Positions 1-49,900 of a stretch of DNA of 64,000 bases are shown here, one piece after another. Origin of the DNA: Takakia lepidozioides. Taxonomy: Eukaryota > Plantae > Bryophyta. Positions within the stretch are counted from its first letter, which is position 1, and each line of letters opens with the position of its first letter. Made by a program: the position numbers and the translations under genes. The stretch spans positions 13,578,001 to 13,642,000 of the forward strand of contig CM060731.1 of the NCBI GenBank assembly GCA_030704615.1, given 5' to 3'. The notes beneath the pieces were generated by a model. That model worked only from the letters and a program-made list of their open reading frames with translations, was not told the DNA's origin and did no database searches.

Positions 1-1400
1 AGCATCGCACTCCATGACACCACATCTCGTTCAGCCATAGTGTTGAACACTCCCTTTGCATCCCCGATGCACCCACATTTTGCCTACATATCCACTAGGG
101 TATTGTTCAAAATGACATTTGGTACAATTCCAGTTTTGAAGATGTCACCATGGACCTCCTTCCTTTTTTTTCAGAGCTGCCAGGGCAGTACAATTCCAGC
201 TTTGATGATATCCCCATGCACCTCTTTGCCCTTCTCCAAGGCTGCCAGGCCTGGAATACATACAAACATGATGTGGCCGGGCGGGACCCCTTCCCCCATC
301 AGTTGCTCATAGGTTACCAAAGCCTCCATCCCATGTCCCTGCTTTGCATACCCTGCAAGCATCGAACTCCACAACACCACATCTCGTTCAGCCATAGTGT
401 TGAACACTCCCTTTGCATCCTCGATGCACCCACATTTTGCATACATGTCCACTAGGGTATTGTTCAAAATGACATTTGGTACAATTCCAGCTCTGAAGGT
501 GTCACCATGGAACTGCCAGGGCAGTGTTTCGAATGACATTAGGTACAATTCCAGCTTTGATGATATTCCCATGCACCTCTTTGCCCTTCTCAAGGGCTGC
601 CAGGCCTGCAATGCATACAAACATAATGTGGCCGGGCTGGACCCCTTCCCCCATCATTTGCTCATAGGTCTCCAAAGCCTCCATCCCACATCCTTGCTGT
701 GCATACCATGCAAGCATCGCACTCCACGACACCACATCTCGTTCAGCCATAGTGTTGAACACTCCCTTTGCATCCCCGATGCACCCACATTTTGCATACA
801 TGTCCACTAGGGTATTGTTCAGAATGACATTTGGTACAATTCCAGCTCTGAAGATGTCACCACGGACCTCCTTCCCCTTTTCCAGAGGTGCCAGGGCAAT
901 GTTTAGAATGACATTAGGTACAATTCCAGCTTTGATGATATCCCCATGCACCTCTTTACCCTTCTCAGGGGTTGCCAGGCTTGCACAAGCATTGCAATGC
1001 ACACAAACATGATGTGGGAGGGCAAAACAAGTTGAAATAGGTCAAAGAAGAAGATGCCCTCACCACATTGTCCTTGAGGTTGTGTCATGACTTGACCGAC
1101 CATCAACCCAAAATGACCTCTTGTGTGTGCTGCTTGTGTCTGTAGTCAGGTAATGTCGGATTGGTCTGTGAGATCAAACCACCACGGTGTAGCTGAGTAG
1201 GCAGAGATTGAAACACGGCCTGCTATGACCAAGCTAACTCTCCCAAGAACGGCAAGCTCGCAAGAATGTTGCGAGCTTCTCCTCGTCTCATCTCCTCCTC
1301 CTCTCCTCCTTCCTGCATCATTTGCTCAACGCCTCCATCCCACGCCCCTGCATATCCAGCGATCATCGCGTTCCATCCCTCGGCTACATGGTGTGGTGCA
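1..1400 (-). pseudogene. Degenerate PLS-class PPR array with an embedded PDF-motif exon fragment; runs off the window start
   Basis: Overlapping minus ORFs (502-1002, 171-620) give L/S/P motifs close to those at 41901-44822 (VILNNTLVDMYAKCGCIEDAKGVF, EKGKEVHGDIIKAGIVPN). There are frameshifts, internal deletions and an in-frame TAG near 84-86. 1016-1250 is homologous to 45300-45560, and a P-motif scrap (WNAMIAGYA...EQMMQEG) lies at about 1310-1375. Confidence 0.9.
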
Positions 1401-8053: not shown

Positions 8054-11018
8054 TTGCGAGGACACATTACAATATATGTCCCTATGTTCATTTGTTCGTA
8101 TCAAGACTTTGTCCATCCTTTCCCGGTCCTTTCTCTTGGCACCCCATCCGAAAACAACCCAAGTACATCAGGAGGGAGCCGTGGGCGAGACGCCGCCCCC
8201 ACGGTACCGGACGATGATGACGATGACAATGACAGTGATAGCAACAATGAGCATGGAATTAACCAGGAGGATGTGCAAGCCATGGAGGATCTCTTAATGC
8301 ATCATGTGGGTGCTGATGCATCCCATGAAGAGGGAACCCGGCCAATCGATGATCCTGAAATGGCCCCCTCAAATGACATCGAGAGGGAGGCGAGAACTCA
8401 TTTGTACGAAAGGGCCAAAGTGAGTCGACTTTCAACAATCTTACTTTTGCTCAATCTTCAAATTCGATTTGGCATAAGTAATGTTGGGATGTCTGCCATA
8501 ATGCAAACTATTGCAGACTATATCCTTGCTCCACACTTGAAACCCAAGATGCCACGGTCGCGGAAAGAGGCGCGCGAAGTCTTGGATTCTGTGGGGATGG
8601 GCTATAAGATTTTTCATGCATGTCCATGTAATAAAACTGGAAGGTACCCCTTGCACTTGTACTTGTTTGAGTTCAATGTTCTTTGTAAATGGAAAAGGTA
8701 ATGCCCCTGTAGTGATTACTTCTTGCTTTCCAAGTGGTAAAGTAGCAGTACTGCATATAATTTGGACTTCATATTAATAACTCGTGGAGTGGTAAGAGGT
8801 AGTCTCCATGATGCTCAGGAAGTTGTTGACATCACTTGAGAGGCTAATAATGCATTAAATGAGTTGTTTGAACCACTGAGGAGGGACTGTCATGCATCAC
8901 AGCCACTTTAGATATGAAAGTATATAGTGCTCATAAATGAATCTGATTTGTATAGGACTGCAATCTGTCGGAATGTTCCTGAAATGGTGTCACAAATTGC
9001 AGGATTTGTTGCAACGCTACTTACTGGATCCCATGCATTGCGAAAAGAATTTTTGTGAAAACTTGTTGAAGACGATTTTCGGACGGAAAGACACAGTGAA
9101 GGTGAGGAACTTGGAGGTAATCGGCATCAGACGTCAGTTGTGGCTTCGGCCTGATCCACAAAACCCTTCACGTATCATGAAACCAGCAGCACCGTATGTT
9201 CTCACTCCCGCTGAAATCACGATATTTCTTGATACTTTGGGGGCTATCAAAACTCCTTCGGGATTTACAGGTGCATTTCATAAACATATACACCCGTCTA
9301 GGAAACATTTGACGAGTATGAAGTCCCATGATTATCACGTTTTGATGCAACAGATTTTACCTGTGTGTATTTGCCATTGCATGGCTCCAGGCCCACGTGG
9401 GGTCATTATGCGTGTGAGTCGCATTTTCCGCCGGATTTGTGCCAAAGTATGGGACCCTAGTGAAATAGATTCATTGCATGAGGATGTTGCTATAACCTTG
9501 TGTCTGTTAGAGAAAGAGTTCCCCCTTCTTTCTTTGATGTCATGACCCATTTGCTAGTTCATCTCGTAGATGAACTAGACACATGTGGTCCGGTGTCTTC
9601 ACGGTGGATGTATCCCATGGAGCGTTACATGAAAGATCTCAAGGGATACGTTAGGAATTACGCAAAGCCAGAAGGGAGTATGGCTGCAGGGAGGAAGGGT
9701 TGAGAACGAGGTCTTGGAAGGTGTCGGCAAAAAGCGGGACGTGAGTGGAGCTGAGAGAGATGCAACACATTTGTATGTGCTGAACAATACCAATGTGATG
9801 GTTCATTGGGTGCAGTGAATTCTTCTTTTCATTGCACCTTATTCATATCAAGTTCAAATGCAATTGTGACTGTCACCAGTGTAATAGAACCACCCACAAA
9901 GTCACAAATGTCCGTGATTCATCGTGATGATAACCACTTCTGTAGTAACAGAATGTCTAAGTGAATGACTTTTTGGAAGAACATGTTCATTTACAAGTCA
10001 TTCTGCTCACTCATCCAGTGGTTTTCAAAGTATCATTCATGCTAGGTAGTTTTTGCAAAATAATGCAACACTTCATTGCTAACATGTATCATTCTTGTTG
10101 CCATTTTGTGACAGAAAGTATGCAACAGAGAAGGCACAGTTCACTGCAGACAGAGAGGCATGTGCTCGTGAGTGGCGTGCCAATCGTTGACGTCACCGCC
10201 GCCTTCCGGTGCCATACCCTCCCCATTTGTTGGAGTTTCCACCCCTACCGGTGTGGATACGCCGTGCAGTCTAGGCCCATGTCTCTGAGCATAGTGTTGA
10301 GGATACGGATGTAATTCATTTGTCTATCCCCCCCTCATTGAGATCAGCTTCATTTCGTGGCATGAAGGCATATGGAAATCATTATCGAGTGGATGACACG
10401 GAGAGTCGTCTTCTTGTCTCTTTTGATTCCGGAGTTGCATCCGTCTTCCAGCAACAGAGCAGAAATAGTGTGCATGATAGAAATCCAGTCATGTCACCAT
10501 TAGAGTACGTTGGGGTCATCAAAGAGATCTTCAAATTGGATTATGGACGAGTGCACCCCATTGTATTTTGTTGTGCTTGGGTAAGGGCCAACCTCGTTGG
10601 ACAAAATGCTACAATGAAGCGGGATTCGTATGGTTTTCTACTTGCGAATTTTGGGAGGATGTTACCCGCCAACGATCAGCCGTTTATCTTTCCATCTCAA
10701 GTTGAACAGGTGTTCTTTTCGGACGAGTCCCCAAGTTCGGAGTGGAAGGTAGTCCTTCGGAAGGATCCAAGAGCAAAAAAGATTGTGGCGGACATAGATC
10801 AATGTGACATTGGAGAAAATGCAGATTTCGATGGCCTTCAGGCACCGTCTATCTTATCAGATCAGCCAATACCTAGGTCGTTAGATGGTGCCACGGCTCT
10901 AAATAAAGAAGACCTGGCTATGTTGGCTACCATTCAAGCGGCGTTTGTGCAACCAACCGCTATTCCAGTTGAGCAAAGTGATTCAGAGGGTGACGAATAT
11001 GTTTCAGATTTAGAATAA
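8054..11018 (+). mobile_element. CACTA/EnSpm TnpD-like transposase, disrupted and internally deleted
   Basis: Motifs in order: MGYKIFHACPCN (8054-8701); LDPMHCEKNFCENLLKTIFG..KDT and MKSHDYHVLMQQILP (8937-9545); a frameshift near 9525 into FFDVMTHLLVHLVDE..GPVSSRWMYPMERYMKDLKGYVRN..KPEGSMA (DUF4218-like); YVGVIKEIFKLDY..FCCAWV..DQPFIFPSQVEQVFF..WKVV (DUF4216-like, 10320-11018). Confidence 0.9.
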
Positions 11019-12070: not shown

Positions 12071-13795
12071 TCATGTCCGAAAGCCCATCACAACCACATT
12101 GCCCTCATGAGTCTCCATGAAACAGCTCCCGGATCTGAAAGTTACCTGATAACCTTGATCCTCCATCTTGCTGACTGATAGTAGTTTCTTCTGGAGTCCC
12201 TCAACATGTAGAACCTCCATGATGTTCTTGCAGACCCCACTCGGCAGCTTGAAGGGAATAGTACCCTTACCCTTGATCTGAAGAGCACTGTCATCACCAA
12301 GATACACCTTTCTGTCACCTGGAAGGTCTTCGTAGGTAGAAAACCATTTTTTGTGTGATGTCATGTGCTGAGAAGCACCAAAGTCGATGTACCAAGTATC
12401 ATCACTCGGAGCTGCAGACAAGGCAGTTGCAAACAACTCACTGTTGTCACTAGCACCCTCCACGTGATTGGCTTCAGGTGCAGATCTCTTGAGTTTGTCA
12501 GCCTTCTTATCAGCTTCCTTCTTTCGACATTCACTAGCATGGTGATTCGGTAGAAACACTTCCCCTTCTTCTTCTTCCCCTTCTCCTGGGTGGATGTACC
12601 AGAGGTAGAGACAGAGTGCTTGCACTTGTGCCCTGTGTTGAGCGCAATATCTGACAGAATAACAACAACAAGACCCTTCTGAAGCGATTCCTCCTGGAGA
12701 AGCACTCCAACAACTAACTCCATGGACAGATCAGTAATAGGACGAGTTCCAAGGGATACCACAACAAACTCAAATGTTGGAGTCAAACTCACCATCGATG
12801 TCATGCATGTGTCTAACTCTGAAATCTCTGACCCTGTCGCTGCAATATGATCTAGTAAAGTTCGCATCTTGGCTATGTGAAAAGCAATGGAATCTCCCTC
12901 ACTCATCTTAAGAGTGAAAAATTATTGTCGCAACTGCAACAACGCATTTCCAAGGCTTGGGCTCATACATCCTGACTAGGAATTCCCAAGATTCACAAGA
13001 TATCTCATGCTTACTCAGTTGCCCAAACAAGGAATCACTCACATGCAAAGAAATAGTTGCAAGAGCTATCTGATCAAGAGATCCTCCCACTGATCTAATG
13101 CATCAACATCTAGTTTTGATGGTTTCTTATGTTTGCCAGACACAACCTTCCATGTGCCCTCTCTAACAAGAACCATTCGCATTTTGTCCTTCCAGATATG
13201 AAACACGTTTCCATCGAACTTTGCAATAGCATGATAACTAAGATGTTGAGAAGACATTTCAAATCTACACAGACCAAGCTAATCAAGTATAGTGATGTCC
13301 TACTTCTCTCAGACTCAAAGAGATATGGATACAAGTGTATAGAAATAAGAACTTCATAGTACCACCAAAGAAACAACTATACAACACAGATCTTTGCTCT
13401 AGCAAGTACTTTCTCTCTTGCTAATCAATCCCACTTCTAGAAATAAGAATGAAACTAGATCTCTCAATCCTGTAAAGAATTCTACAGAGAAACCCACTCT
13501 GATACCATGTCAAGAAAACACACACATACTTATGAAGATGCAGGGATGAAACAATACATGACTCTATTACAAAGGAGCTCTCCTCCCAACCATAGAGGTC
13601 TGCACAAAGACACAAAGATCGTTTGCCTCTCCCCTGAGCCTAATATATATACCTACTAGATGTCTCCCACCGAGAGATGTCTATTCCCTCAAGGCTTACC
13701 TAATAGCTATTCTAAGCCGGATCTATTCTAAGTATCTAGAATATCCAATAGCTATTCTAAGCCGTATCTTTTCTAGGTATCAAGAATATCTAACA
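12071..13795 (-). mobile_element. Truncated Ty1/Copia LTR retrotransposon (5' LTR, PBS, decayed gag-protease)
   Basis: LTR TGTTAG...TGACA at 13795-13508, followed directly by the Met-i PBS TGGTATCAGAG (13507-13497). Gag N-terminus AKFDGNVFHIWKDKMRMVL, degenerate zinc knuckle, and protease WYIDFGASQHMT followed by VYLGDDSALQIKGKGTI..VLHVEGLQKKLLSVSKM. Several frameshifts; no integrase, RT or 3' LTR. Confidence 0.9.
13508..13795 (-). repeat. Copia 5' LTR, 288 bp
   Basis: TG...CA ends, adjacent PBS, TATA-like tatatata, and an internal ~45-bp duplication (aatagctattctaagccg...gaatatc). Confidence 0.85.
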
Positions 13796-17362: not shown

Positions 17363-18490
17363 CTACGGATGGCATGCACCTATGCAGAACTTTCCTGTCG
17401 TCGCACTGTGCGAGTACACACCTAGCCCGAGTGGCCTCCTATCAAACAACCACGATTCTTTACGAAAATTAAACACCAATGTCATATCTGACTCGCCATA
17501 GGCCACAAAGACTAGGTGATCGCCGCACCCAAACACATCCCAGAGCCAATCGCCAATATAACTTGTGCGTAACTTATTCAAGACCTTGTCAGGAACTCTG
17601 GGAAGCTTCCTCCATTTTTGAGTGGACGGATTAGACTCCCACAAATCTGGTATCAAACGATGATAACATTGACAACGATGTGGGAGAACCGGGTAAACCG
17701 AACCAGCGTCAAATGGCCTCGACTCGAGACCACGAAGTGTTCAAATATCCACCAAGGGCCCTCTAAGTCACGGGGGAATAGTGTTGTGGTAAACTTGGCC
17801 CATACTGCAGTGTGGATGTCATAAGTAAAGAGTATCCCGTCCAGTGTCAAGGCATAAAACTTTCTACCACACCTCACAAGGCGCATCCTCAGAGAATCAG
17901 TAGGCGTGCCTTGCCTCTTCCACGAGTTGGAGACAGTCGTACACCACCAAAAACTCTTTCATAATCCATAAACACAATTTATAGTTTCCACTGCTGTTAT
18001 CCACAACTAACGTCTCGAAATCATATAAGTCGAAATTGCATCGGGCAGGCACCCTAGGCAATTGTCTCCAGCACTTCAAGATCGGATTGAACACGGTGTA
18101 GTAGGCACGCTCAATGTTATAATCATAGCCAGAAGTTGATTTGATACAAAATAGACCTTCATCTGCAGAAACTAATAAGTGATGTGGAGAGGTCACAGGA
18201 AAATGAGGTGCTAGGAAAGAGAGGTCCAGCGTGTGTGTCTGTCTCCTCAAATGATCAATAAACTTCATTACACGTAAAACCGGGTCCGTAGGCAAGAAAA
18301 AAATGAATAAAGGTTCCATTTGATCAAGACTCAGTTTGTTACGGAGATGCATAAAACCCGAGGTTGTGGACAAGGATTGCCACCGCTTGCACACCATCTG
18401 TAAGCGACACAGATCTGCACAAAGTAAGTATGTCAAAATTTTGTCCAACAAATCACACGGCAGCCTGCTCCATGGGCTCTCTTGTATCAT
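17363..18490 (-). pseudogene. Intronless F-box gene with a beta-propeller/kelch-like C-terminus and two frameshifts
   Basis: F-box WSRLPCDLLDKILTYLLCADLCRLQMVCKRWQSL, then SADEGLFC and VFNPILKCWRQLP. After LVVYDC the sequence continues in a shifted frame (SNSWKRQ..MRLVRCG, near 17933), and shifts again near 17655 (LWESNPSTQKWRKL..LVFNFRKESW). Confidence 0.8.
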
Positions 18491-41214: not shown

Positions 41215-41870
41215 AAGGTGCATAGTTACCAAGGTCCGTGGGATCACCTTTTTTTAAATAATAAGATGGTCCGGCTATGCTTCCAAGATTGTGGCATACG
41301 ATGTAGTCGGTAACAGAGTTGAAGGAATTTAAATAGAAGAACATGGAATTGGGGGTCAAGTGCTTGAAGTATGGTATTGGGAATGAGATTTGGCCCGGGG
41401 CCTTAGCTTTGGATAGAGCTTTTAGGCAGGAGTCATATAGGTCAGTTGTGAAGAGATCAAGGATACGGTCAGTGGGGGTGCCTCTCTTTTCCAGTGAGAA
41501 ACCGTCGAGATCGTGCCATGGGTAGTGTTTGACTTTCCCTCAACAGTATGTTAAGAGCTTCACTAGCATTTTCCACTGTTTTAGAGGAGGATTACCTGAC
41601 GCAATTGAGGGTGGTGAGCTTCTTCCTGCCACTGCCGATTCTTTGAGGGAACTGAAAGGGAACGCTGGATCCTCACCTCTTATCATGAGGGAACAGGCCG
41701 CACCCTGTACTTTATGGGAGGGGTGTGGCACTGACATCACCTTTTTGGCCCGGCCTGGCTCGCCAAGAAAGGTCTGCCAGCACCTTACCCCCCATAGAGG
41801 ACAGGGCGCGGCCCATTCCCTAGTACATCATAGCCAATTTTCTAGGGGGAAATGTGGGATGAACCAAGAA
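41215..41870 (-). mobile_element. Non-LTR retrotransposon (LINE) ORF2 fragment
   Basis: Minus-strand translation across frameshifts at ~41415-41218 reads LSKAKAPGP/NLIPNTILQAL..FKFLQLCY..MPQSWKHSRTILLFKKGDPTDLGNYAP, the conserved pre-RT signature (KAPGPDG...W...ILLxKKGD...NYRP). The upper boundary is approximate. Confidence 0.75.
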
Positions 41871-41900
41871 GACACTCACACTTCACAGAAAAACATCATA

Positions 41901-44900
41901 TCACCAGTAATCCCCACAAGAACAAACCCCATCTTGGAAGTGGTGAAAGCGGTTAGCGTCCCGTACAACAATGGCCCGGCCAGCTATCTTTGAGATGAAC
42001 TTGGTGGCAGTGTGGCAGTCACCACACACCCGAAGATTCTTGATGATGCGTAGAGGCGTCCCAGGGGCCGTGCTGATCAGCCCAAAGCCAATGGCCAGCT
42101 TCTCACTGTGGTGGCAAAGAGAAAACTCCTTTTGCTCCTCCCCCACATCATGCAATACAAAGCGTGTGTCAGGCACATACCCTGCCTCCTTCATCTTTCC
42201 AGACAATCTTCTCAGCTCGGCATGGATTTCCTCAATTTTCGGATGCAATTTGTCATCTACAACAAAGGTGTGCACACTGTTGGCGACCTCAATACAACAG
42301 CGACCTGGCTCCTTTTTAACCCCTCTGACCTTCATCATTTTCCTCACCTTTGCAGTATCGTCCCACCTGCCAGCTGCGGCATAGATGTTCGATAGCAACA
42401 CATACGTCGCGGCATCCTGTTCATCCCACTTGAGAATAGATGTTGCCACACGTTCAGCCATCTCCACATTGCAATGAATTCTGCAGGCACCAAGCAAGGC
42501 CCTCCACACCTCAGCACTTGCTTTCATTGGCATTTTGTTAATGAAGACCTCTGCCTCACTCAATCGCCCCGAACGACCAAGAAGGTCCACCATGCACCCG
42601 AAGTGCTCCACTGCTGGAGTGATGCCATGATCTTGACTCAGGGAATCGAAGTAGTATCTGCCTTCATCCACTAGGCCAGCATGGCTACATGCAGAGAGGA
42701 CACATATGAAAGTGATACTGTCCAGCTTCAAGCCTTCCACTTGCATTTCTTCCAATAGTTGCAGGGCCTCCATATCACAACCATGCTGGGCATATCCTGC
42801 GATCATCGCATTCCAAGACACCAAATTTCGTTCAGCCATATTGTCGAACACTCCCTTTGCATCCTTGATGCTCCCACCTTTGGCATACATGTCCACCAGG
42901 GCAGTGTTCAGAATGACATCTGGTACAATTCCAGCTTTGACGATATCACCATGGACCTCTTTGCCCTTTTCCAGGGCTGCCAAGCTTGCACATGCATTGC
43001 AAATGCAAACAAACGTGACCTGGTCTGGGTTCACCCCTTCCTGCATCATCTGCTCATAGGTCTCCAAGGCCTCCATTCCGCACCCATGCTGGGCATATCC
43101 TGCAATCATCGTGTTCCAGGACATCACATCTCGTGCCGTCATATTGTCGAACACTCCCTTTGCATCCTTGATGCTCCCGCCTTTGGCATACATGTCCACC
43201 AGGGCAGTGTTCAGAATGACATCTGGTACAATTCCAGCTTTGATGATATCGCCATGGACCTCTTTGCCCTTTTCCAGTGCTGCCAAGCTCGCACACGCGT
43301 TGCAAACACAAACGAATGTGACCCGGTCCGGCTTCACCCCTTCCTGCATCATTTGCTCATAGGTCTCCAAACCGTCCACCCCACACCCATGCTGGGCATA
43401 TCCTGCGATCATTGTGTTCCAGGATACCACATCTCGTGCAGTCATATTGTCGAACACTCCCTTGGCATCCTCGATGCTCCCACCTTTGGCATACATGTCC
43501 ACCAGGGCATTGTTCAGAATGACATCTGGTACAATTCCAGCTTTGAAGATGTCACCATGGACCTCTTTGCCCTTTTCCAGTGCTGCCAGGCTCGCACACA
43601 CATTGCAAACACAAGCAAACGTGACCCGGTCCGGCTTCATCCCTTCCAGAATCATTTGCTCATAGGTCTCCAGAGCCTCCATCCCCCACCCATGCTGGGA
43701 ATATCCTGCGATCATCGCGTTCCAAGACACCACATTTCGTTCAGCCATATTGTCAAACACTCCCTTTGCATCTTCGATGCTTCCGCCTTTGGCATACATG
43801 TCGACCAGGGTATTGTTCAGAATGACGTCTGGTACAATTCCCGCATTGATGATGTCACCATGGACCAATTTGCCCTTTGCCACTGCTGGCAGGCTCGCAC
43901 ATGCATTGCAAACACAAACGAAAGTGATCTTGTCTGGCTTCACCCCTTCCCGCCTCATTTGCTCATAGGTCTCCAAAGCCCTCATCCCACACCCATGCTG
44001 GGCATATCCTGCGATCATCGTGTTCCAGGACACCACATCTCGTTCAGCCATACTGTCGAACACTCCCTTTGCATCTTCGATGCTTCCGCCTTTGGCATAC
44101 ATGTCCACCAGGGTATTGTTCAGAATGACATCTGGTGCAATTCCGGCTTTGATGATGTCACCATGGACCCTTTTGCCCTTTTCCAGGGCTGCCAGGCTCG
44201 CACATGCATTGCAAACGCAAACAAACGTGATGTGGTTAGGCTTCACCCCTTCCTGCATCATTTGCTCATATGTCTCCAACGCATTCTTACCACACCCATG
44301 CTTGGTAAATCCTGCCATCATTATATTCCACGTGATCAAACCTCGTTCAGGCATCTGGTTGAACACTTGGTGTGCATCCATGATGTCCCCGCATTTAACA
44401 TACATGTTGACAAGGGTGTTGTGTAGAAAAACACTTGGCTTGAATCCACTTTGGATAATGTGAGAGTGCACCTGCTTTCCAGCTTCCAGGTTTTTCATCT
44501 TGATGCACTTATGCAAGAGACAGACATAAGTATCTGAATCTGCTGGAATGCCTCCTTGGTTCAAAATACGTAGCACCTCTTTCAGTTGCCCTGCCTCACA
44601 TAGTGTCCTCACATGCCCATAAGTGCCAGATGAGATACTGTGGACTCCCTCTCTTGGTCCTCTTTTGGAAGCTGTGGTCATGGTGGAGGTGCCTGATTTT
44701 ATCAACTGTACTGCTGCTGCTGCTTCCAGTTGACCATCCACCCATACAGGTTTCTTGTAGCTATAAATCCACAGGGAATCATAGATACACTTGTGCTTGA
44801 AGTCTGCCCCTCTTGGATGAATCTGGACCTCACACTCCATCCCTGCTCCCTCAGCTATCGCTGCCTCTGCACCAATAATGCATAGATCCTCTCCTTGCTG

Positions 44901-46915
44901 GTAGCATCTGACAAAGACCCTAAATTTTTTCTAGCAAACACCCCAACCCTACTTATCACGCACTAGTTCCTATGCTGCATTGCTCCCAAGACTTTAAAAA
45001 TGTGCTGGGGAGAGAGAGAGGGGACGACAATTTTTCAAAACGGTCTGCGATGCATCTTGTTGTCGGCTTCTCTCTGTAAGTTAAGAGGCATTCACCTCTT
45101 TGCCTCCATGATCCCACCATTGACTGGGGTCCGAAAAATATTCCTTCCAAACATTCTCCTCGTCCCTGTTTTCTGCTTTTGCATAGTTGCCTGTTGCCAC
45201 ATTGGCAGTAACATGTTAAAATCCCTCCAAACCACCACAGATCCACCTGATGAGCTAACTCGCAGAATTCAACATGAAACATTCGGGACAACTCTCATAA
45301 GAGGACACAACAGGCCGAAATGTGTTGAAGAAGAAGGTGGCCTCACCACATTGTCCTTGACCTTGTGACGTGAATGCAGCTAGCTTTTCTTTCACCCAAG
45401 GAGGATTCAACCAACCATCAACCCAAAGGACCTCTTGTGTGTGCTGCTTGTGTCCATAGTCGGATGATCTCCGATTGGTCTGTAACCACCAAAGTGCAAC
45501 TGAGCAGCCATAGATTTCACCATGGCCTCCCAAGACCAAGCTGACCCGCCCAAGTACTTCGTGCACACCAGGAAAAAGAAAAAATCACGATGCTGACAGG
45601 AAGAGCCCACTTTTGCAGTACGGACAAACTTCTTCACATCATACATCAAGAAAGCCATACCTTGCCATTGCAGTTGTCCCACCATTGTGAAGGATCTTCT
45701 AAGAACTCAAGCCAGCGCTGCTTCATACTCCACGGTAGACCTTTGTGCCCGAAACTCCGAAATCATCAACACTTTGACAGGTTCCTCTATGGAGGAGTGC
45801 TAGTGCAGTTTTCAAAACATTCATGTAAGTTACTGCCATCGGACTTTACACAATGAGAAACAAAAGAACATGTCCCAACTTACACAAATGATAAACAAGA
45901 TTGTGCCTGACAAGGCTGCCCCTCTAATCAGGGTCCTTGTGAGACATACTCACTTTCATCTGCAAGCTTCGAAGGAGCTCCATCATCTACACCACAATCA
46001 GAACCGCACTCTGATATCTTTCCATCACCAGACTGTTCTCGATCTTGTTGCATGATATTTAGTTCGTCTTTCACGCAAGGAGGGTTTAACCAACCCTCCA
46101 TCCACAAGCCCTCTTGTGCACGCTGCTTATGTCTGTAGTCTGGAGATTTTGGAGTGGTCTGTGAAAGAGACCAGGGAGCAGCTGAGCAGCAATAGTCTCG
46201 ACCCTCCCAAGTACCTTGAAAACTCCAGGGAAAAGACCCTGCGCATCCTACTTTCAAGCCCTGCTTAGGAAGAACAGCGCCTACGATACTCACAGTGAAG
46301 GAGTTTTTTGCAGAGCAAAAGTGATATTCTAACTTACTAGGGGTATAATCACAAAATTATCATACCAGAGTTCAGTCAAACTCCCTCAGACTCCTCCACA
46401 TCCTACATGAAGAAAGCTCACCTTGTCAGCACTGCAGTCCCACCGTTGTGTAGGATCTTTAAAGAACTCCTGCCAGTGCTGTTCCATGCTCCCACGTTGA
46501 CCTACGTGCCAGACATAGCAATTGTCGGCCTTCTCTAACCATCCCGCGTGCTTTCTTTGCCTAGAGTACATTCGTGTCCCTGAATTGCTCAAAGACAATT
46601 CAAAGCCTGGATGCTACCACAGCTAACCTAGAAGGAAACCGCAAAGTGTTTTGTGTTCTCACCTAGATTCAATGGCATCCCTGAAGGTTGGCGAGGCGCC
46701 ACAGCAACCACATGCAAGGGACGCCGTCCACTGGGCACTGTAAGGTGGGTTGACACTTTCAGCTCCACAGCCCATCCCCTCCATCCGCTGCATGACGCGA
46801 GGCCTCTCGCATGACCGAAACAAGAGGGCCGGCCCTTGGGTACGGAGTCGGCCTGTGCGGGGGTGAGAACGCAGGAAGACGATGCCATCCCTGCCAGTGA
46901 GTTAGAAAGAGTCAT
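41901..46915 (-). CDS. PLS-class PPR-E1-E2-DYW RNA-editing factor with a transit-peptide-like leader and three OSB-type PDF motifs (7-exon model, 1281 aa)
   Basis: Final exon 44822-41901 has 20 PLS motifs, E1/E2, a PG box, HSEKLA, RVCGDCH and terminal DYW. Phase-consistent upstream exons: 46915-46663, 46579-46422, 46158-45954, 45740-45661 (weak AAG acceptor), 45479-45347 and 45190-45096; total 3846 nt. The PPR-DYW part is near-certain; the upstream model is inferred. Confidence 0.85.
42700..44330 (-). repeat. 303-bp tandem repeat encoding near-identical P-L-S triplets
   Basis: 101-aa units recur. Shadow antisense ORFs start at 43111, 43414 and 44020 (spacing 303 and 606). Confidence 0.95.
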
Positions 46916-49900
46916 CCCCGATGCAAGAACCGATTGCAGCAGCAGGCTCCTCTATACATGGCAAACGATCATCCAGCTTCCAGCATCACGCATGCTTGTG
47001 AACCGTCATTCACTGCTGCATTTGCTAAGTCTGTTTCCTGCCGTCTCCCTCTCTCTCTATCTCTCTCACAGTCCCTCAAACGTCGCCAAAAGAAAATGAC
47101 TGTCACTAATCATATCTTAATCACCAATATCGTCACTAATCTAGCCACTAATCTAACTTGCTAGTGCTAGCTTACTGCCAGTGCCCCTCTGCAGTTTTTG
47201 GCTCTTGGGGAAAGACCCACAAGGCGGGAATGCAAGCGCCCTCCTTGTTGTGGAGGGCTCATTACAACAAAGGTGACAGACATACTGATGTGATCTCTTT
47301 GGAGCTGTGGAGAGCCACTCTCTTCAGTCACACTGGGGGATCACTAATGGGGTTCATAAAGTAGTGACAAGTGAATCAGGCTGGTGATCTCGGAATGAGC
47401 ACCTCCTGTTCCGGTGATTTGAATGAGAGACTGGACTGAACCTGCGTTCTTCTCGACAATTTGAGAACCTGGTGCATATGCACCACAGTCTTCGAATGGG
47501 TGGAGAGAGCAGACGCTTGTAGGAAAAAGTGGCAAATGTGCAGTCTGAGGGTGGAGATTTATGTTGTAAGTTCACATGATATTGATAAAATCCCCCGTGA
47601 ACCAAAGGATAAAGTAGGATCAATTCTATGTATGCAACCAGGCCAGTTTTTTTGGCGCAATCACTGACAGTGAATTTGATCTCAGCATTACTTGTTAAAT
47701 GTTGATCAATGATATTTAAGATCTATAATCAGAAGATGGACATTACGTAGTAGGGCAGATGCCCCCAGGGCAGCGCAGTCACGGTCTTGGGTTCTGTTGT
47801 ACCGGGGGGGGGACAGACATACAGGTGTTCCTTCTTGGGGTGTAGAATCAGACGAGGGACTCATTTAAGTGTGGAGGGAGCTTTTGAATTGCAACAATAG
47901 CAACTCCTAGGCATTACAAACCCCAGAATTAGCTTCTCCAATCACCCAATGGAAGAACCAAGTCCCTGCAATTCAGTTGTGCTGCCAAGGTTACATTGTC
48001 TCGCCTTTATCGGACGGGTGTGTCAGGTGGATAGGAAGCAGGTCAGCACCATCACTGCCAACTATCCTATACAAACTGTAAGAATCCTCTATCAGTATTC
48101 TTAATGTGATATTTGCCACTTGTGAAAGACGAAGTGTTACTTAGCTTTTGTAATTGGTGGCCGAATGCGGAATCAACTTACATGCTATGCAATTCTTTCA
48201 ACAATTGTGGGGTGTTGGAAATGATCATTGAATCTGACCAATATCTTTCCTCCCTCAAGTTTATGGTACGACATTCAAGAAGTGTTGTCTTCCCTGAGAG
48301 AAAAGCATTATTGTAATTGTGGAGCTACAGTGCTTTGCTAACTCGCACTCTGTGTGTTTATGTTTTGTCATAGCCCTCTCCATCCCATTCTCTCACTCTT
48401 TCATGTATAACTTGTGGAGAGAAGAGCCTATGAGGTTTTGTTTCGAGAGTGTACCAGAGCTTCTATGATAGGGGGGTTCAAGGTGAATGGGTAAACAACA
48501 GACTGCTGACACAGGCAAAGAACTTCAAGAAGGTTGATGCTTCCTGTCTTTAATATTGCCACTGCCCTGACAGGGAGTCGTCAAATTTATTCATTGATGA
48601 ACGGAGCCAGTGTCCCTATGCAGGAACAATTTGGACAGTCTCTTTGGGTGGGATTTGTTTGTTATTGAGGAAATGAACTAAAGGGTTCTACGTGATCTCC
48701 AGAAGGCCAGGCATATTTTCTTCACTGCTTACTGTCCACTTTGTATGTCCTAGCAAAATGCTTCCATGATGCTCACTGTTGGTCAAGGAGGTGGGGAGGG
48801 GATTTAGTGATCAAAAGTCAACTGTGGTTGTTGCAGGCTCTTATGATGGTTACCATGTTCTAAAACCACATGATGGGCAGAGAATGTCCTAATAAGACGT
48901 TTGCCGTAGCCTTGTGGCCATAGACCCCTCTCCCAGTTTGGGCGGAACAATGATGGGTGGAGAGAGAGAGATGTATATATATATAATTGTTTTCGGCAGC
49001 CCTGTGCCCATATACCCCACGCCCAGTTTGGGAAGAAAGAGAGGAACAAAGAAGGAAATTTTTTTATCCACAGGAGAGAGAGCAGGTGATGCACCCAGAT
49101 CATTCATTAGTAGCCATGTATCACTGTCATACAATTATTCAGTGCCTACGTGGTGCACATGATATTTGTAAAGTAGAGTTTGCTTGCAAGTGCATGCATG
49201 CTTGGCTGGCCTCTGTTACATTGGTGGTATGGGGGAGGTCTGCAGATGTAAACCTGGACTAGCGCTTTTATGTAACCGCACCTTCCAAGGAGAATGAGGG
49301 TAAGTTTTCACTTGAATTTTCTTTTATACAATTTGACCTGCTAGTTCCATTCATCTTTTCAGTCATTGGTATGTAAACTGCAGGTATTCCAATGGATGAA
49401 AGATTTAGCTTGTATGGACAAGCATGATACTTGAGCCAAACTGCATCATTCATCTGGTATATTGTTTGTGATGGCACTCGATCGTTGCTTGATGCGAGAG
49501 TCCTGTTGCAGTTTGGATCATGTGGTGCAGTCCTAAAATCCCATTGCGAAGACTAGTACCCCCTGGGACTAGGGACTTAGGATCCACCCTAGCTAGCACT
49601 TGCAGAGAATGGTCAAGGTTCTCTCTTGCTCCAATGTGGTCCATCGCTTTGGACTTATTCCTGATGCTGGTTGGCAGAAACTTCTGGAATTGCATGGGAA
49701 GATTCACAGATGTGCAGACATACTGGCAGTTGGGTTGAGCTCATTTAGAGTGACACTAGGTGAGCTGCATAAGAGATGCAAGCCATCCCTTGCAGAAAAT
49801 AGTGTTGGAATTCATTTGGGATTGACCGCAGCTGTATAAATTGGTCAAGCCTTGATTAGAATGCAAGAATTTCATCAGACCTAGACACATACTCCAGTCT

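What the first reader, a model, noticed from the sequence alone, without database searches (positions are those of the whole stretch)
41901..46915. RNA-editing DYW deaminase fused to three OSB-type PDF (ssDNA-binding) motifs and an organelle-targeting leader
Seen: joining GT-AG exons upstream of the PPR ORF gives three motifs: WQEFFKDPTQRWDCSADK|TTPKSPDYRHKQRAQEGLWMEGWLNPPCVKDEL, WLEFLEDPSQWWDNCNGK|TNRRSSDYGHKQHTQEVLWVDGWLNPPWVKEKL and WKEYFSDPSQWWDHGGKE|IHPRGADFKHKCIYDSLWIYSYKKPVWVDGQL. Exon 1 is Ser/Ala/Arg-rich and acid-poor, like a plastid transit peptide. Established: W-x5-P-x2-WWD-x4-K-x-P-x2-PDFKHK-x4-ALW is the PDF motif of plant OSB/pTAC9 proteins, where it mediates ssDNA binding, and PLS-E-DYW proteins are organellar C-to-U editors. 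Inference: PDF modules could tether a sequence-programmable cytidine deaminase to nucleoids or transcription bubbles for co-transcriptional editing, raise its nucleic-acid affinity, or direct it to ssDNA. The ORF track hides this because every motif is cut by an intron. Novelty is unverified; similar N-termini may exist unannotated in other bryophyte PPR models.
Basis: partly seen in the sequence, partly recalled or inferred. Interest (0 to 1): 0.88.

Follow-up and report, generated by a model that had tools for sequence, protein, structure and literature searches.

The report
RNA-editing gene with three OSB-type modules

Summary
The 979-aa ORF (41901-44840, minus strand) is an intact PLS-E-E+-DYW editing factor. 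Upstream lie six short GT-AG exons whose six half-motifs are the six best matches in the whole window to an HMM built only from OSB PDF motifs.

The PDF identity is shown three ways:
- A lycophyte PPR N-terminus with the same motifs hits named OSB1/2/3 at E 1e-16 to 1e-40.
- The phase-0 intron splitting each motif sits where it does in a Marchantia OSB gene and a Sphagnum PPR-DYW gene.
- An annotated Diphasiastrum gene has almost the same exon plan: leader, then 80/178, 80/157, 71 and PPR. Here it is leader, then 80/205, 80/133, 77 and PPR.

I corrected two acceptors (exon 2 starts at 46501, exon 4 at 45740). The three motifs score in the lowest 7-15% of real PDFKHK halves and have lost near-invariant residues.

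RNA-like contigs cover the model and stop at its ends. One ends at the exon 1 donor; another runs unspliced through the last acceptor. What the PDF modules do is untested.

No paper searched describes PDF-PPR proteins. This scan had already noted the same architecture many times on other DNA of this genome.

The parts
46663..46915 (-). Exon 1 (253 nt, ends in phase 1): ATG and an acid-poor, Ser/Ala/Arg-rich leader, transit-peptide-like
   Evidence: ORF and donor CTAG|GTGAGA. Composition: 2 acidic, 8 basic, 25 S/A/T in 84 aa. Exact-match contigs lie at 46661-46812, 46787-46975 and 46828-47030 in two runs. The leader exons of the Sphagnum and Diphasiastrum genes also end in phase 1. There is no sequence homolog, and targeting was not tested.
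46422..46501 (-). Exon 2 (80 nt, phase 1 to 0): first half of PDF module 1
   Evidence: OSB-only HMM positions 3-26, E 2.7e-4. The acceptor CACGTAG|GT is homologous to exon 4's CACAAAG|GT. The 80-nt size and the phases match Sphagnum and Diphasiastrum. It also fits the contig that ends at 46661. The longer alternative starting at 46579 is also in frame, but it does not fit that contig end.
45954..46158 (-). Exon 3 (205 nt, phase 0 to 1): second half of PDF module 1 (PDYRHK variant) plus an acidic linker
   Evidence: HMM positions 26-61, E 1.1e-7. Acceptor TTTCACAG|ACC and donor GTGAGT.
45661..45740 (-). Exon 4 (80 nt, phase 1 to 0): first half of PDF module 2
   Evidence: HMM positions 4-25, E 9.3e-6. 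In-frame stops upstream force the start to 45754 or lower. A start at 45740 fits the phase-1 donor of exon 3 and the 80-nt pattern.
45347..45479 (-). Exon 5 (133 nt, phase 0 to 1): second half of PDF module 2 (SDYGHK variant) plus a linker
   Evidence: HMM positions 26-60, E 7.1e-7. Acceptor GGTTACAG|ACC and donor G|GTGAGG. A contig joint lies at 45346/45347, from a paralog.
45096..45172 (-). Exon 6 (77 nt, phase 1 to 0): first half of PDF module 3
   Evidence: HMM positions 3-26, E 6.8e-7. Acceptor AAAAGCAG|AA and donor GAG|GTGAAT. The Diphasiastrum counterpart is 71 nt with the same phases.
41901..44822 (-). Exon 7: second half of PDF module 3 (ADFKHK), then the PLS array, E, E+ and DYW domains, and the stop codon
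   Evidence: HMM positions 27-59, E 5.6e-6. Pfam: PPR_2 1e-102, E_motif 2e-19, Eplus 1e-5, DYW_deaminase 1e-43. The ORF is open for 979 aa from an ATG at 44840, which lies inside intron 6.
42766..44407 (-). Very uniform tandem P-L-S triplets inside exon 7
   Evidence: TRF: period 303 nt, 5.4 copies, 87% matches, no indels.
41904..42182 (-). DYW cytidine-deaminase domain with HSE, CGDCH and a terminal CSCGDYW
   Evidence: Pfam PF14432 on residues 881-973 of the exon 7 translation. The signature residues are read from the ORF translation.
46916..47030 (-). Probable 5' untranslated region
   Evidence: An exact-match contig of run X2 covers 46828-47030. No contig lies in 47124-47300 in either run. 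The runs are RNA only by the tool's guess.

Best explanation
This is a nuclear gene of a seedless land plant. The species was not determined; the closest PPR relatives found are lycophyte proteins at 50-59% identity.

The modelled protein has about 1249 residues in this order:
- an organelle-type leader;
- three tandem PDF modules, each built from two exons (a 77-80 nt first half and a longer second half) separated by a phase-0 intron;
- a PLS pentatricopeptide array;
- E and E+ motifs;
- a complete DYW cytidine deaminase.

It belongs to an old family of PDF-PPR proteins seen here in a moss (Sphagnum), a liverwort (Calypogeia) and a lycophyte (Diphasiastrum). The PDF module is homologous, intron included, to the PDF motif of OSB proteins.

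Shown here: the architecture, the homology, the conserved exon plan and the intact catalytic signatures.

Inferred:
- The PPR array reads an organellar RNA and the DYW domain converts a C to U, as in characterised PLS-DYW factors.
- The PDF modules add affinity for single-stranded nucleic acid that does not depend on sequence. This would hold the editor on organellar transcripts or on single-stranded DNA of the nucleoid.

In this copy the modules have drifted and may bind weakly or not at all.
For: - Pfam on exon 7 finds PPR, E, E+ and DYW.
- The six half-motifs are the top six hits of an OSB-only PDF HMM in the six-frame window, E 1e-7 to 3e-4.
- P0014:1-260, a Diphasiastrum PPR N-terminus with three such motifs, hits named OSB1/2/3 at E 1e-16 to 3e-40 in 5.8 billion proteins.
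- The motif intron is in phase 0, five residues after WWD and five before PDFKHK. This holds in the Marchantia OSB gene, the Sphagnum PPR-DYW gene and all three modules here.
- Exon sizes and phases: here 253/80/205/80/133/77/PPR; Diphasiastrum P0097 355/80/178/80/157/71/146+PPR; Sphagnum 289/80/PPR.
- 27 of the 120 best PPR relatives carry the motif N-terminally by pattern match.
- Modules 1 and 2 are 72-74% identical in exons against 56% in the intron. Their dN/dS is about 0.44 over 67 codons.
- Contigs of two runs cover 41888-47123 and not the flanks. One ends at the exon 1 donor.
- The PDF motif of OSB1 is reported to be sufficient for ssDNA binding (PMC6963530; PMC6451138).
Against: - No read-level proof exists that the seven exons are joined in this copy. 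The runs are RNA only by the tool's guess, and they are contigs.
- One exact contig (44716-44948) runs unspliced across the exon 7 acceptor.
- Against columns that are invariant in 20 reference motifs, or at least 90% conserved in 111 motifs, this copy has many changes. Motif 1 has W16R, R20S, F31Y, W50C and one extra residue. Motif 2 has R20C, P29S, F31Y, K32G and one extra residue. Motif 3 has R20G, K23E and P29A.
- The second halves score at the 7th-15th percentile of 602 real halves.
- The acceptors of exons 2, 4 and 6 have weak pyrimidine tracts.
- A decayed paralog lies in the same window, so this family does decay here.
- The role of PDF in any PPR protein is untested. The leader has no homolog and no targeting prediction was possible.
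Confidence: 0.7

Rival explanations
1. The upstream PDF exons are relics in this copy. The expressed product is only the PPR-DYW part, translated from the ATG at 44840 on intron-retaining or internally started transcripts. Alternatively, the whole locus is a young non-functional paralog of a very large family.
For: - An exact contig runs unspliced through the exon 7 acceptor (44716-44948).
- The ATG at 44840 opens the 979-aa ORF.
- All three motifs have lost near-invariant residues and score low.
- A broken paralog lies at 1-1216 of the same window.
- More than 11000 paralogous contigs at 90-99% identity show a huge, fast-turning family.
Against: - A protein starting at 44840 would have no targeting leader.
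- All six small exons keep open frames, GT-AG borders and the exact phases of the Diphasiastrum and Sphagnum genes.
- Exons are better conserved than the intron between modules 1 and 2, and dN/dS is about 0.44.
- Contigs cover exon 1 and its upstream 115 nt, and one ends at the exon 1 donor.
Confidence: 0.2
2. The architecture is as described, but the PDF modules work as protein-protein contact or self-association modules, not as nucleic-acid binders. They might, for example, dock the editor to OSB, other nucleoid proteins or an editosome partner.
For: - AtOSB2 is reported to be a tetramer (PMC6963530).
- OSBs shape RecA-dependent reactions in a way that depends on the partner protein (bioRxiv 10.64898/2026.10.24.761589).
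- The predicted PDF fold is a small helix, three short strands and a helix, with no solved nucleic-acid-binding analog.
Against: The only biochemical statement available is that the PDF motif of OSB1 suffices for ssDNA binding. No interaction data exist for PDF.
Confidence: 0.1
3. The motifs resemble PDF by chance, or are a different W-rich repeat.
For: Pfam has no model that reports them. Each half is short.
Against: - They are the six best of 3044 peptides, with E down to 1e-7, using an HMM trained without PPR proteins.
- The intron position and phase are conserved with an OSB gene.
- The reciprocal search recovers named OSBs.
Confidence: 0.01

Closest known systems
PLS-class PPR-E-DYW organellar C-to-U RNA editing factors (for example Physcomitrium PPR56, PMC10482289 listed)
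   Same: PLS repeats, E and E+ motifs, and a DYW domain with HSE, CGDCH and a terminal DYW. An N-terminal leader. A nuclear gene with one long PPR exon.
   Different: Three PDF modules sit between the leader and the PPR array. None of the papers searched mentions such a module in a PPR protein. The Funaria PPR77 and Ceratodon relatives in the hit list lack the motif by pattern search.
OSB proteins (OSB1-4 of Arabidopsis; OSB of Marchantia and Physcomitrium)
   Same: The same 50-60 residue PDF motif, in one to several tandem copies. The same phase-0 intron inside the motif, and the same phase-1 start of the first-half exon.
   Different: OSBs have an SSB-like OB fold (PF00436) in front and the PDF motifs at the C-terminus. 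Here there is no OB fold, the PDF modules are N-terminal, and PPR-DYW follows.
Annotated but unnamed PDF-PPR proteins: Diphasiastrum complanatum O6H91_11G109000 (P0097) and O6H91_13G002800 (P0014), Sphagnum jensenii P0102, Calypogeia fissa P0041
   Same: Leader, then one to three PDF modules, then PLS-PPR with or without DYW. P0097 has the same seven-part exon plan, with 80-nt first-half exons and identical phases.
   Different: Those proteins keep the canonical WWDNR and PDFKHK signatures, while this copy has drifted. The PPR parts are only 50-59% identical to this one. P0097 has one extra intron after the third module.

Membership tests
PLS-class PPR-DYW editing factor | Tandem P, L and S pentatricopeptide repeats | tested here: met
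   PPR_2 at 1.1e-102 with 11 stretches and PPR at 7.9e-91 with 13 stretches. There is a 303-nt P-L-S tandem.
PLS-class PPR-DYW editing factor | E and E+ (E1/E2) motifs between the repeats and the deaminase | tested here: met
   E_motif at 2.2e-19 (residues 783-845) and Eplus_motif at 1.1e-5 (residues 850-877).
PLS-class PPR-DYW editing factor | DYW deaminase domain with the zinc-binding HxE and CxxCH signatures and a C-terminal DYW | tested here: met
   PF14432 at 1.1e-43 over profile positions 1-93 of 93. HSE, CGDCH and a terminal CSCGDYW are read in the ORF.
PLS-class PPR-DYW editing factor | Import into plastids or mitochondria, and C-to-U editing of a defined site | not testable with these tools
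   Only the leader composition is available. No targeting predictor, organelle genome or assay was at hand.
PDF motif (OSB-type) | A significant match to a profile of bona fide OSB PDF motifs | tested here: met
   The halves were scored separately: E 1.1e-7, 7.1e-7 and 5.6e-6 for the second halves, and 2.7e-4, 9.3e-6 and 6.8e-7 for the first halves, in a search space of 3044 peptides.
PDF motif (OSB-type) | Conserved signature residues: W, WWD-x-R, K, PDFKHK, LW and P-x-W | tested here: inconclusive
   The first W, D18, H33, K34, L40, W41 and P48 are kept in all three motifs. R20 is lost in all three. F31 is Y in two motifs. P29 is lost in two. W16 and W50 are lost in motif 1. K23 is E in motif 3. 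The second halves score at the 7th-15th percentile of real motifs.
PDF motif (OSB-type) | The gene structure of the module: a phase-0 intron between the WWD half and the PDFKHK half | tested here: met
   The position and phase are the same in the Marchantia OSB gene, the Sphagnum PPR-DYW gene, the Diphasiastrum gene P0097 and all three modules here.
PDF motif (OSB-type) | Binding of single-stranded DNA | not testable with these tools
   Known only from the literature on OSB1.
OSB protein family | An SSB-like OB-fold domain in front of C-terminal PDF motifs | tested here: not met
   There is no PF00436 or any other Pfam hit on exons 1-6. The PDF modules are N-terminal and are followed by PPR-DYW. 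The gene shares a module with OSBs but is not an OSB.

The most novel reading that the evidence does not exclude
The PDF modules bring a sequence-programmable cytidine deaminase onto single-stranded DNA of the organelle nucleoid, such as transcription bubbles, R-loops or replication intermediates. Editing would then be coupled to transcription at the template. In the extreme case, some PDF-PPR-DYW proteins would deaminate organellar DNA itself. That would be a route by which edited states could be written into the genome in seedless plants.
Probability: 0.08. Interest if true: 0.9.

Novelty: new variant of a known kind. Interest (0 to 1): 0.55.

Why it matters
PLS-DYW editing factors are usually described as a leader, RNA-reading repeats and a deaminase. 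A second, conserved nucleic-acid-binding module on many of them in mosses, liverworts and lycophytes is not in the papers I could search. The module was inherited from, or shared with, the OSB genome-maintenance proteins, together with its intron.

It gives a testable link between RNA editing and the organelle nucleoid. It may also matter for engineered PPR-DYW editors, if an accessory module changes affinity or off-target load.

It also shows that the PDF motif is a mobile two-exon cassette of matching phases. That explains its variable copy number in OSBs and its spread to PPR genes.

This particular copy adds a three-module member whose modules are drifting. That is useful for asking which residues are dispensable.

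Tried and rejected
- The search for homologous proteins on residues 1-45 of the ORF (the third motif's second half) found nothing: 2 candidates, none significant. This half is too diverged for the word filter, so the blank says little.
- Pfam gives no family for any of exons 1-6. It also gives none for a 13-copy PDF array protein, P0241. So Pfam-A has no PDF model, and the blank is not evidence against the motif.
- The acceptor at 45786 for exon 4 was rejected because in-frame TGA TGA follows it. The acceptor at 46581/46580 (exon 2 starting at 46579) was set aside in favour of 46503/46502.
- Foldseek against the PDB (best E 2.9) and VIA-align against 48161 chains (best Z 3.0) gave no analog for the confident PDF model, which has pLDDT 87.
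- The AU test for a single clade of PPR-linked PDF motifs did not finish in time. Only the clustering is reported: 9 changes against 31.5 in shuffles, inflated by truncated Sphagnum PPR fragments counted as non-PPR.
- The Zaegel 2006 OSB1 paper is not held. Its claims are cited through reviews.
- The locus of P0014 is not on record.
- Read laying joints inside the PPR array and the joints 45333-43088, 45454-43513 and 43387-45346 come from paralogs and say nothing about this copy.
In one search the exons were concatenated inside a script only to count length and stops, and nothing of it was printed or sent on.
- The kinesin and ICR2 proteins with PDF motifs (P0268, P0264) look like merged angiosperm gene models and were not followed.
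Full report
**1. What is in the sequence**

On the minus strand, the ORF 41901-44840 (979 aa) is a complete PLS-class editing factor. Pfam finds PPR_2 (1e-102), PPR (8e-91), E_motif (2e-19), Eplus_motif (1e-5) and DYW_deaminase (1e-43, full profile). The translation shows HSE, CGDCH and a terminal CSCGDYW. Its P-L-S triplets are unusually uniform: a 303-nt tandem with 5.4 copies and 87% matches.

Each is cut after its 18th residue by a GT...AG intron.

**2. The exon model, and two corrections**

Checking frames showed that an acceptor at 45786 cannot serve the exon with the second motif's first half, because TGA TGA follows it in frame. The usable acceptors are at 45756/45755 or 45742/45741. 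Only the second fits the phase-1 GTGAGT donor of exon 3, and it gives an 80-nt exon.

For exon 2, an acceptor at 46503/46502 (CACGTAG|GT) is homologous, base for base, to that of exon 4 (CACAAAG|GT), and it also gives 80 nt. It explains why an exact contig of run X1 stops at 46661, two bases past the exon 1 donor: the next exon begins with GT.

The model is then:
- E1 46915-46663 (253 nt)
- E2 46501-46422 (80 nt)
- E3 46158-45954 (205 nt)
- E4 45740-45661 (80 nt)
- E5 45479-45347 (133 nt)
- E6 45172-45096 (77 nt)
- E7 44822-41901

The phases run 0-1, 1-0, 0-1, 1-0, 0-1, 1-0, 0-end. The split codons are GGT, AGT and GAA. The total is 3750 nt including the stop, or about 1249 residues. Every exon is open in its frame.

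Everything below was done exon by exon.

**3. Are the motifs PDF motifs?**

I took 30 PDF motifs from 24 non-PPR proteins returned by a search. Most are named OSB1/2/3 or single-strand DNA-binding protein by NCBI, and the rest are unnamed SSB-domain proteins. I built an HMM from them and ran it over all 3044 six-frame peptides of the window.

The six half-motifs are hits one to six, with E 1.1e-7 to 2.7e-4. First halves align to HMM positions 3-26 and second halves to positions 26-61. The seventh hit (E 0.03) is a decayed paralog at 1106-1222, and everything else has E above 0.5.

In the other direction, the N-terminal 260 residues of a Diphasiastrum PPR protein with three such motifs (P0014) hit named OSB1, OSB2 and OSB3 proteins at E 1e-16 to 3e-40 in 5.8 billion sequences.

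Gene structure agrees:
- In the Marchantia OSB gene the motif is cut in phase 0 between ...WWDNRFNK and KNPKAPDFKHK.
- In a Sphagnum jensenii PPR-DYW gene it is cut between ...WWDHRSEK and GNKKYPDFKHK, by a 156-nt intron.
- The three modules here are cut at the same place and phase: five residues after WWD and five before the PDFKHK position.
- The first-half exon starts in phase 1 in all of them. It is 107 nt in the Marchantia OSB gene and 80 nt in Sphagnum.

The PDF module is therefore a two-exon cassette. When its second-half exon ends in phase 1, as in the internal modules here and in Diphasiastrum, it can be duplicated or inserted without breaking the frame.

**4. The fusion is a family, not a one-off**

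Of the 120 best relatives of the PPR ORF (50-59% identity, the best being Diphasiastrum complanatum), 27 match a PDF pattern in front of the repeats. They include Calypogeia fissa and Sphagnum jensenii proteins.

A profile of 20 motifs finds 1385 representatives (E up to 1e-3) among 1.84 billion. The long ones that I checked are PPR proteins of Diphasiastrum and Sphagnum, plus one Logan transcript-like ORF. There are also PDF-only arrays of up to 13 copies.

The modules are always N-terminal, apart from one merged model.

The annotated Diphasiastrum gene for P0097 has exons of 355, 80, 178, 80, 157, 71, 146 and 2593 nt with phases 1, 0, 1, 0, 1, 0, 2. That is nearly the plan found here. I take it as the strongest support for the model in the absence of reads.

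PPR-linked motifs cluster on a motif tree: 9 changes of label against 31.5 in shuffles. Several of the non-PPR neighbours are truncated Sphagnum PPR fragments. One origin is not excluded and not shown.

**5. State of this copy**

Against columns that are invariant in 20 reference motifs, and at least 90% conserved in 111 diverse ones, this copy has drifted:
- Motif 1 has W16R, R20S, F31Y, W50C and one extra residue.
- Motif 2 has R20C, P29S, F31Y, K32G and one extra residue.
- Motif 3 has R20G, K23E and P29A.

Scored as halves, the first halves lie at the 10th-43rd percentile of 602 real halves and the second halves at the 7th-15th. The PDYRHKQ variant is shared with the decayed paralog at 1103-1216, so part of this drift is a trait of a local subfamily.

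Modules 1 and 2 are 72-74% identical in exons and 56% in the alignable part of the intron. Their dN/dS is about 0.44 over 67 codons. This is a noisy figure that suggests weak constraint.

**6. Expression**

The only runs found are two small sets of Logan contigs from organism A, in two studies, which the tool guesses to be RNA. More than 11000 contigs at 90-99% identity pile onto the PPR part, so the family is very large in that organism.

Contigs lie from about 41888 to 47123, and none lies in 47124-47300. Exact-match contigs cover 46661-46812, 46787-46975 and 46828-47030. The first carries 180 further letters that do not continue into intron 1, as expected for E1 joined to E2 and E3.

Against efficient splicing, an exact contig covers 44716-44948 and so runs through the E7 acceptor. 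I read this as follows: the region is probably transcribed from upstream of exon 1, but splicing of this copy is not demonstrated.

**7. How it probably works**

Established knowledge of PLS-DYW factors gives the core. The repeats bind an organellar transcript upstream of a target C, and the DYW domain deaminates it. All signatures needed for that are intact here.

The PDF part is inference. Reviews state that the PDF motif of OSB1 suffices for ssDNA binding (PMC6963530; PMC6451138). AlphaFold gives a confident small fold of a helix, three short strands and a helix (pLDDT 87), with no solved analog.

The most economical reading is an accessory single-strand binder that raises affinity for RNA or holds the editor at the nucleoid. 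A protein-contact role is the main functional rival. In this copy the modules may be losing that role.

**8. Novelty**

Seven full-text searches turned up no paper that links PDF motifs to PPR or DYW proteins. They combined PDF motif or domain, OSB or OSB1, DYW, PPR, PLS-class and pentatricopeptide. The 2026 OSB family survey kept only proteins with both an OB fold and PDF, which would drop PDF-PPR proteins.

The proteins themselves are in GenBank as hypothetical or generic PPR proteins. This scan had already noted the same architecture on many other stretches of this genome: 311 notes, some followed up. I used those notes as leads and re-tested the homology, the taxon spread (moss, liverwort and lycophyte; ferns not tested here) and the shared intron.

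**Verdict**

The functional reading is open, and this copy is a drifting three-module member of an undescribed but widespread family.

Noticed in passing
window 1-1216, minus strand: A decayed paralog. An exon like exon 5 (acceptor CACAG|ACC, a PDYRHKQHTQEV half-motif, then a frameshift) is followed by the conserved CAATGTGGTGAGG donor and by PLS repeats broken by stops and frameshifts. The repeats run off the window start.
   Followed up: partly
window 41701-47300 in runs X1 and X2: More than 11000 (X1) and 6800 (X2) contigs at 90-99% identity lie on the PPR part. This points to a very large, young PPR-DYW family in organism A, with many contigs joining an exon-5-like PDF half directly to PLS repeats.
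   Followed up: partly
window 42766-44407: The P-L-S triplets are 87% identical at DNA level over 5.4 copies with no indels. This suggests recent internal duplication or gene conversion inside the RNA-reading array.
   Followed up: no
residues 95-129 of the exon 7 translation (about window 44436-44540): Pfam Transpos_assoc (PF13963) scores 54 bits (E 1.8e-14) on a stretch that is plainly PPR sequence. Some Ginkgo PPR proteins carry the same precomputed hit, so this is probably a contaminated or cross-matching Pfam model.
   Followed up: no
P0241 (Kingdonia uniflora, 1160 aa), P0243 (908 aa), P0268 (Coptis chinensis), P0264 (Striga hermonthica): Two proteins consist of 11-13 tandem PDF motifs with no other Pfam domain. 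Two angiosperm models join three PDF motifs to a kinesin motor or to an ICR2-like protein; these are possibly merged gene models.
   Followed up: partly
window 10320-11018 (+), 12071-12906 (-), 17897-18490 (-): Transposon remains (DUF4216, copia-type gag and the Pol beta-barrel domain) and an F-box ORF lie nearby. The setting is an ordinary plant nuclear one.
   Followed up: no
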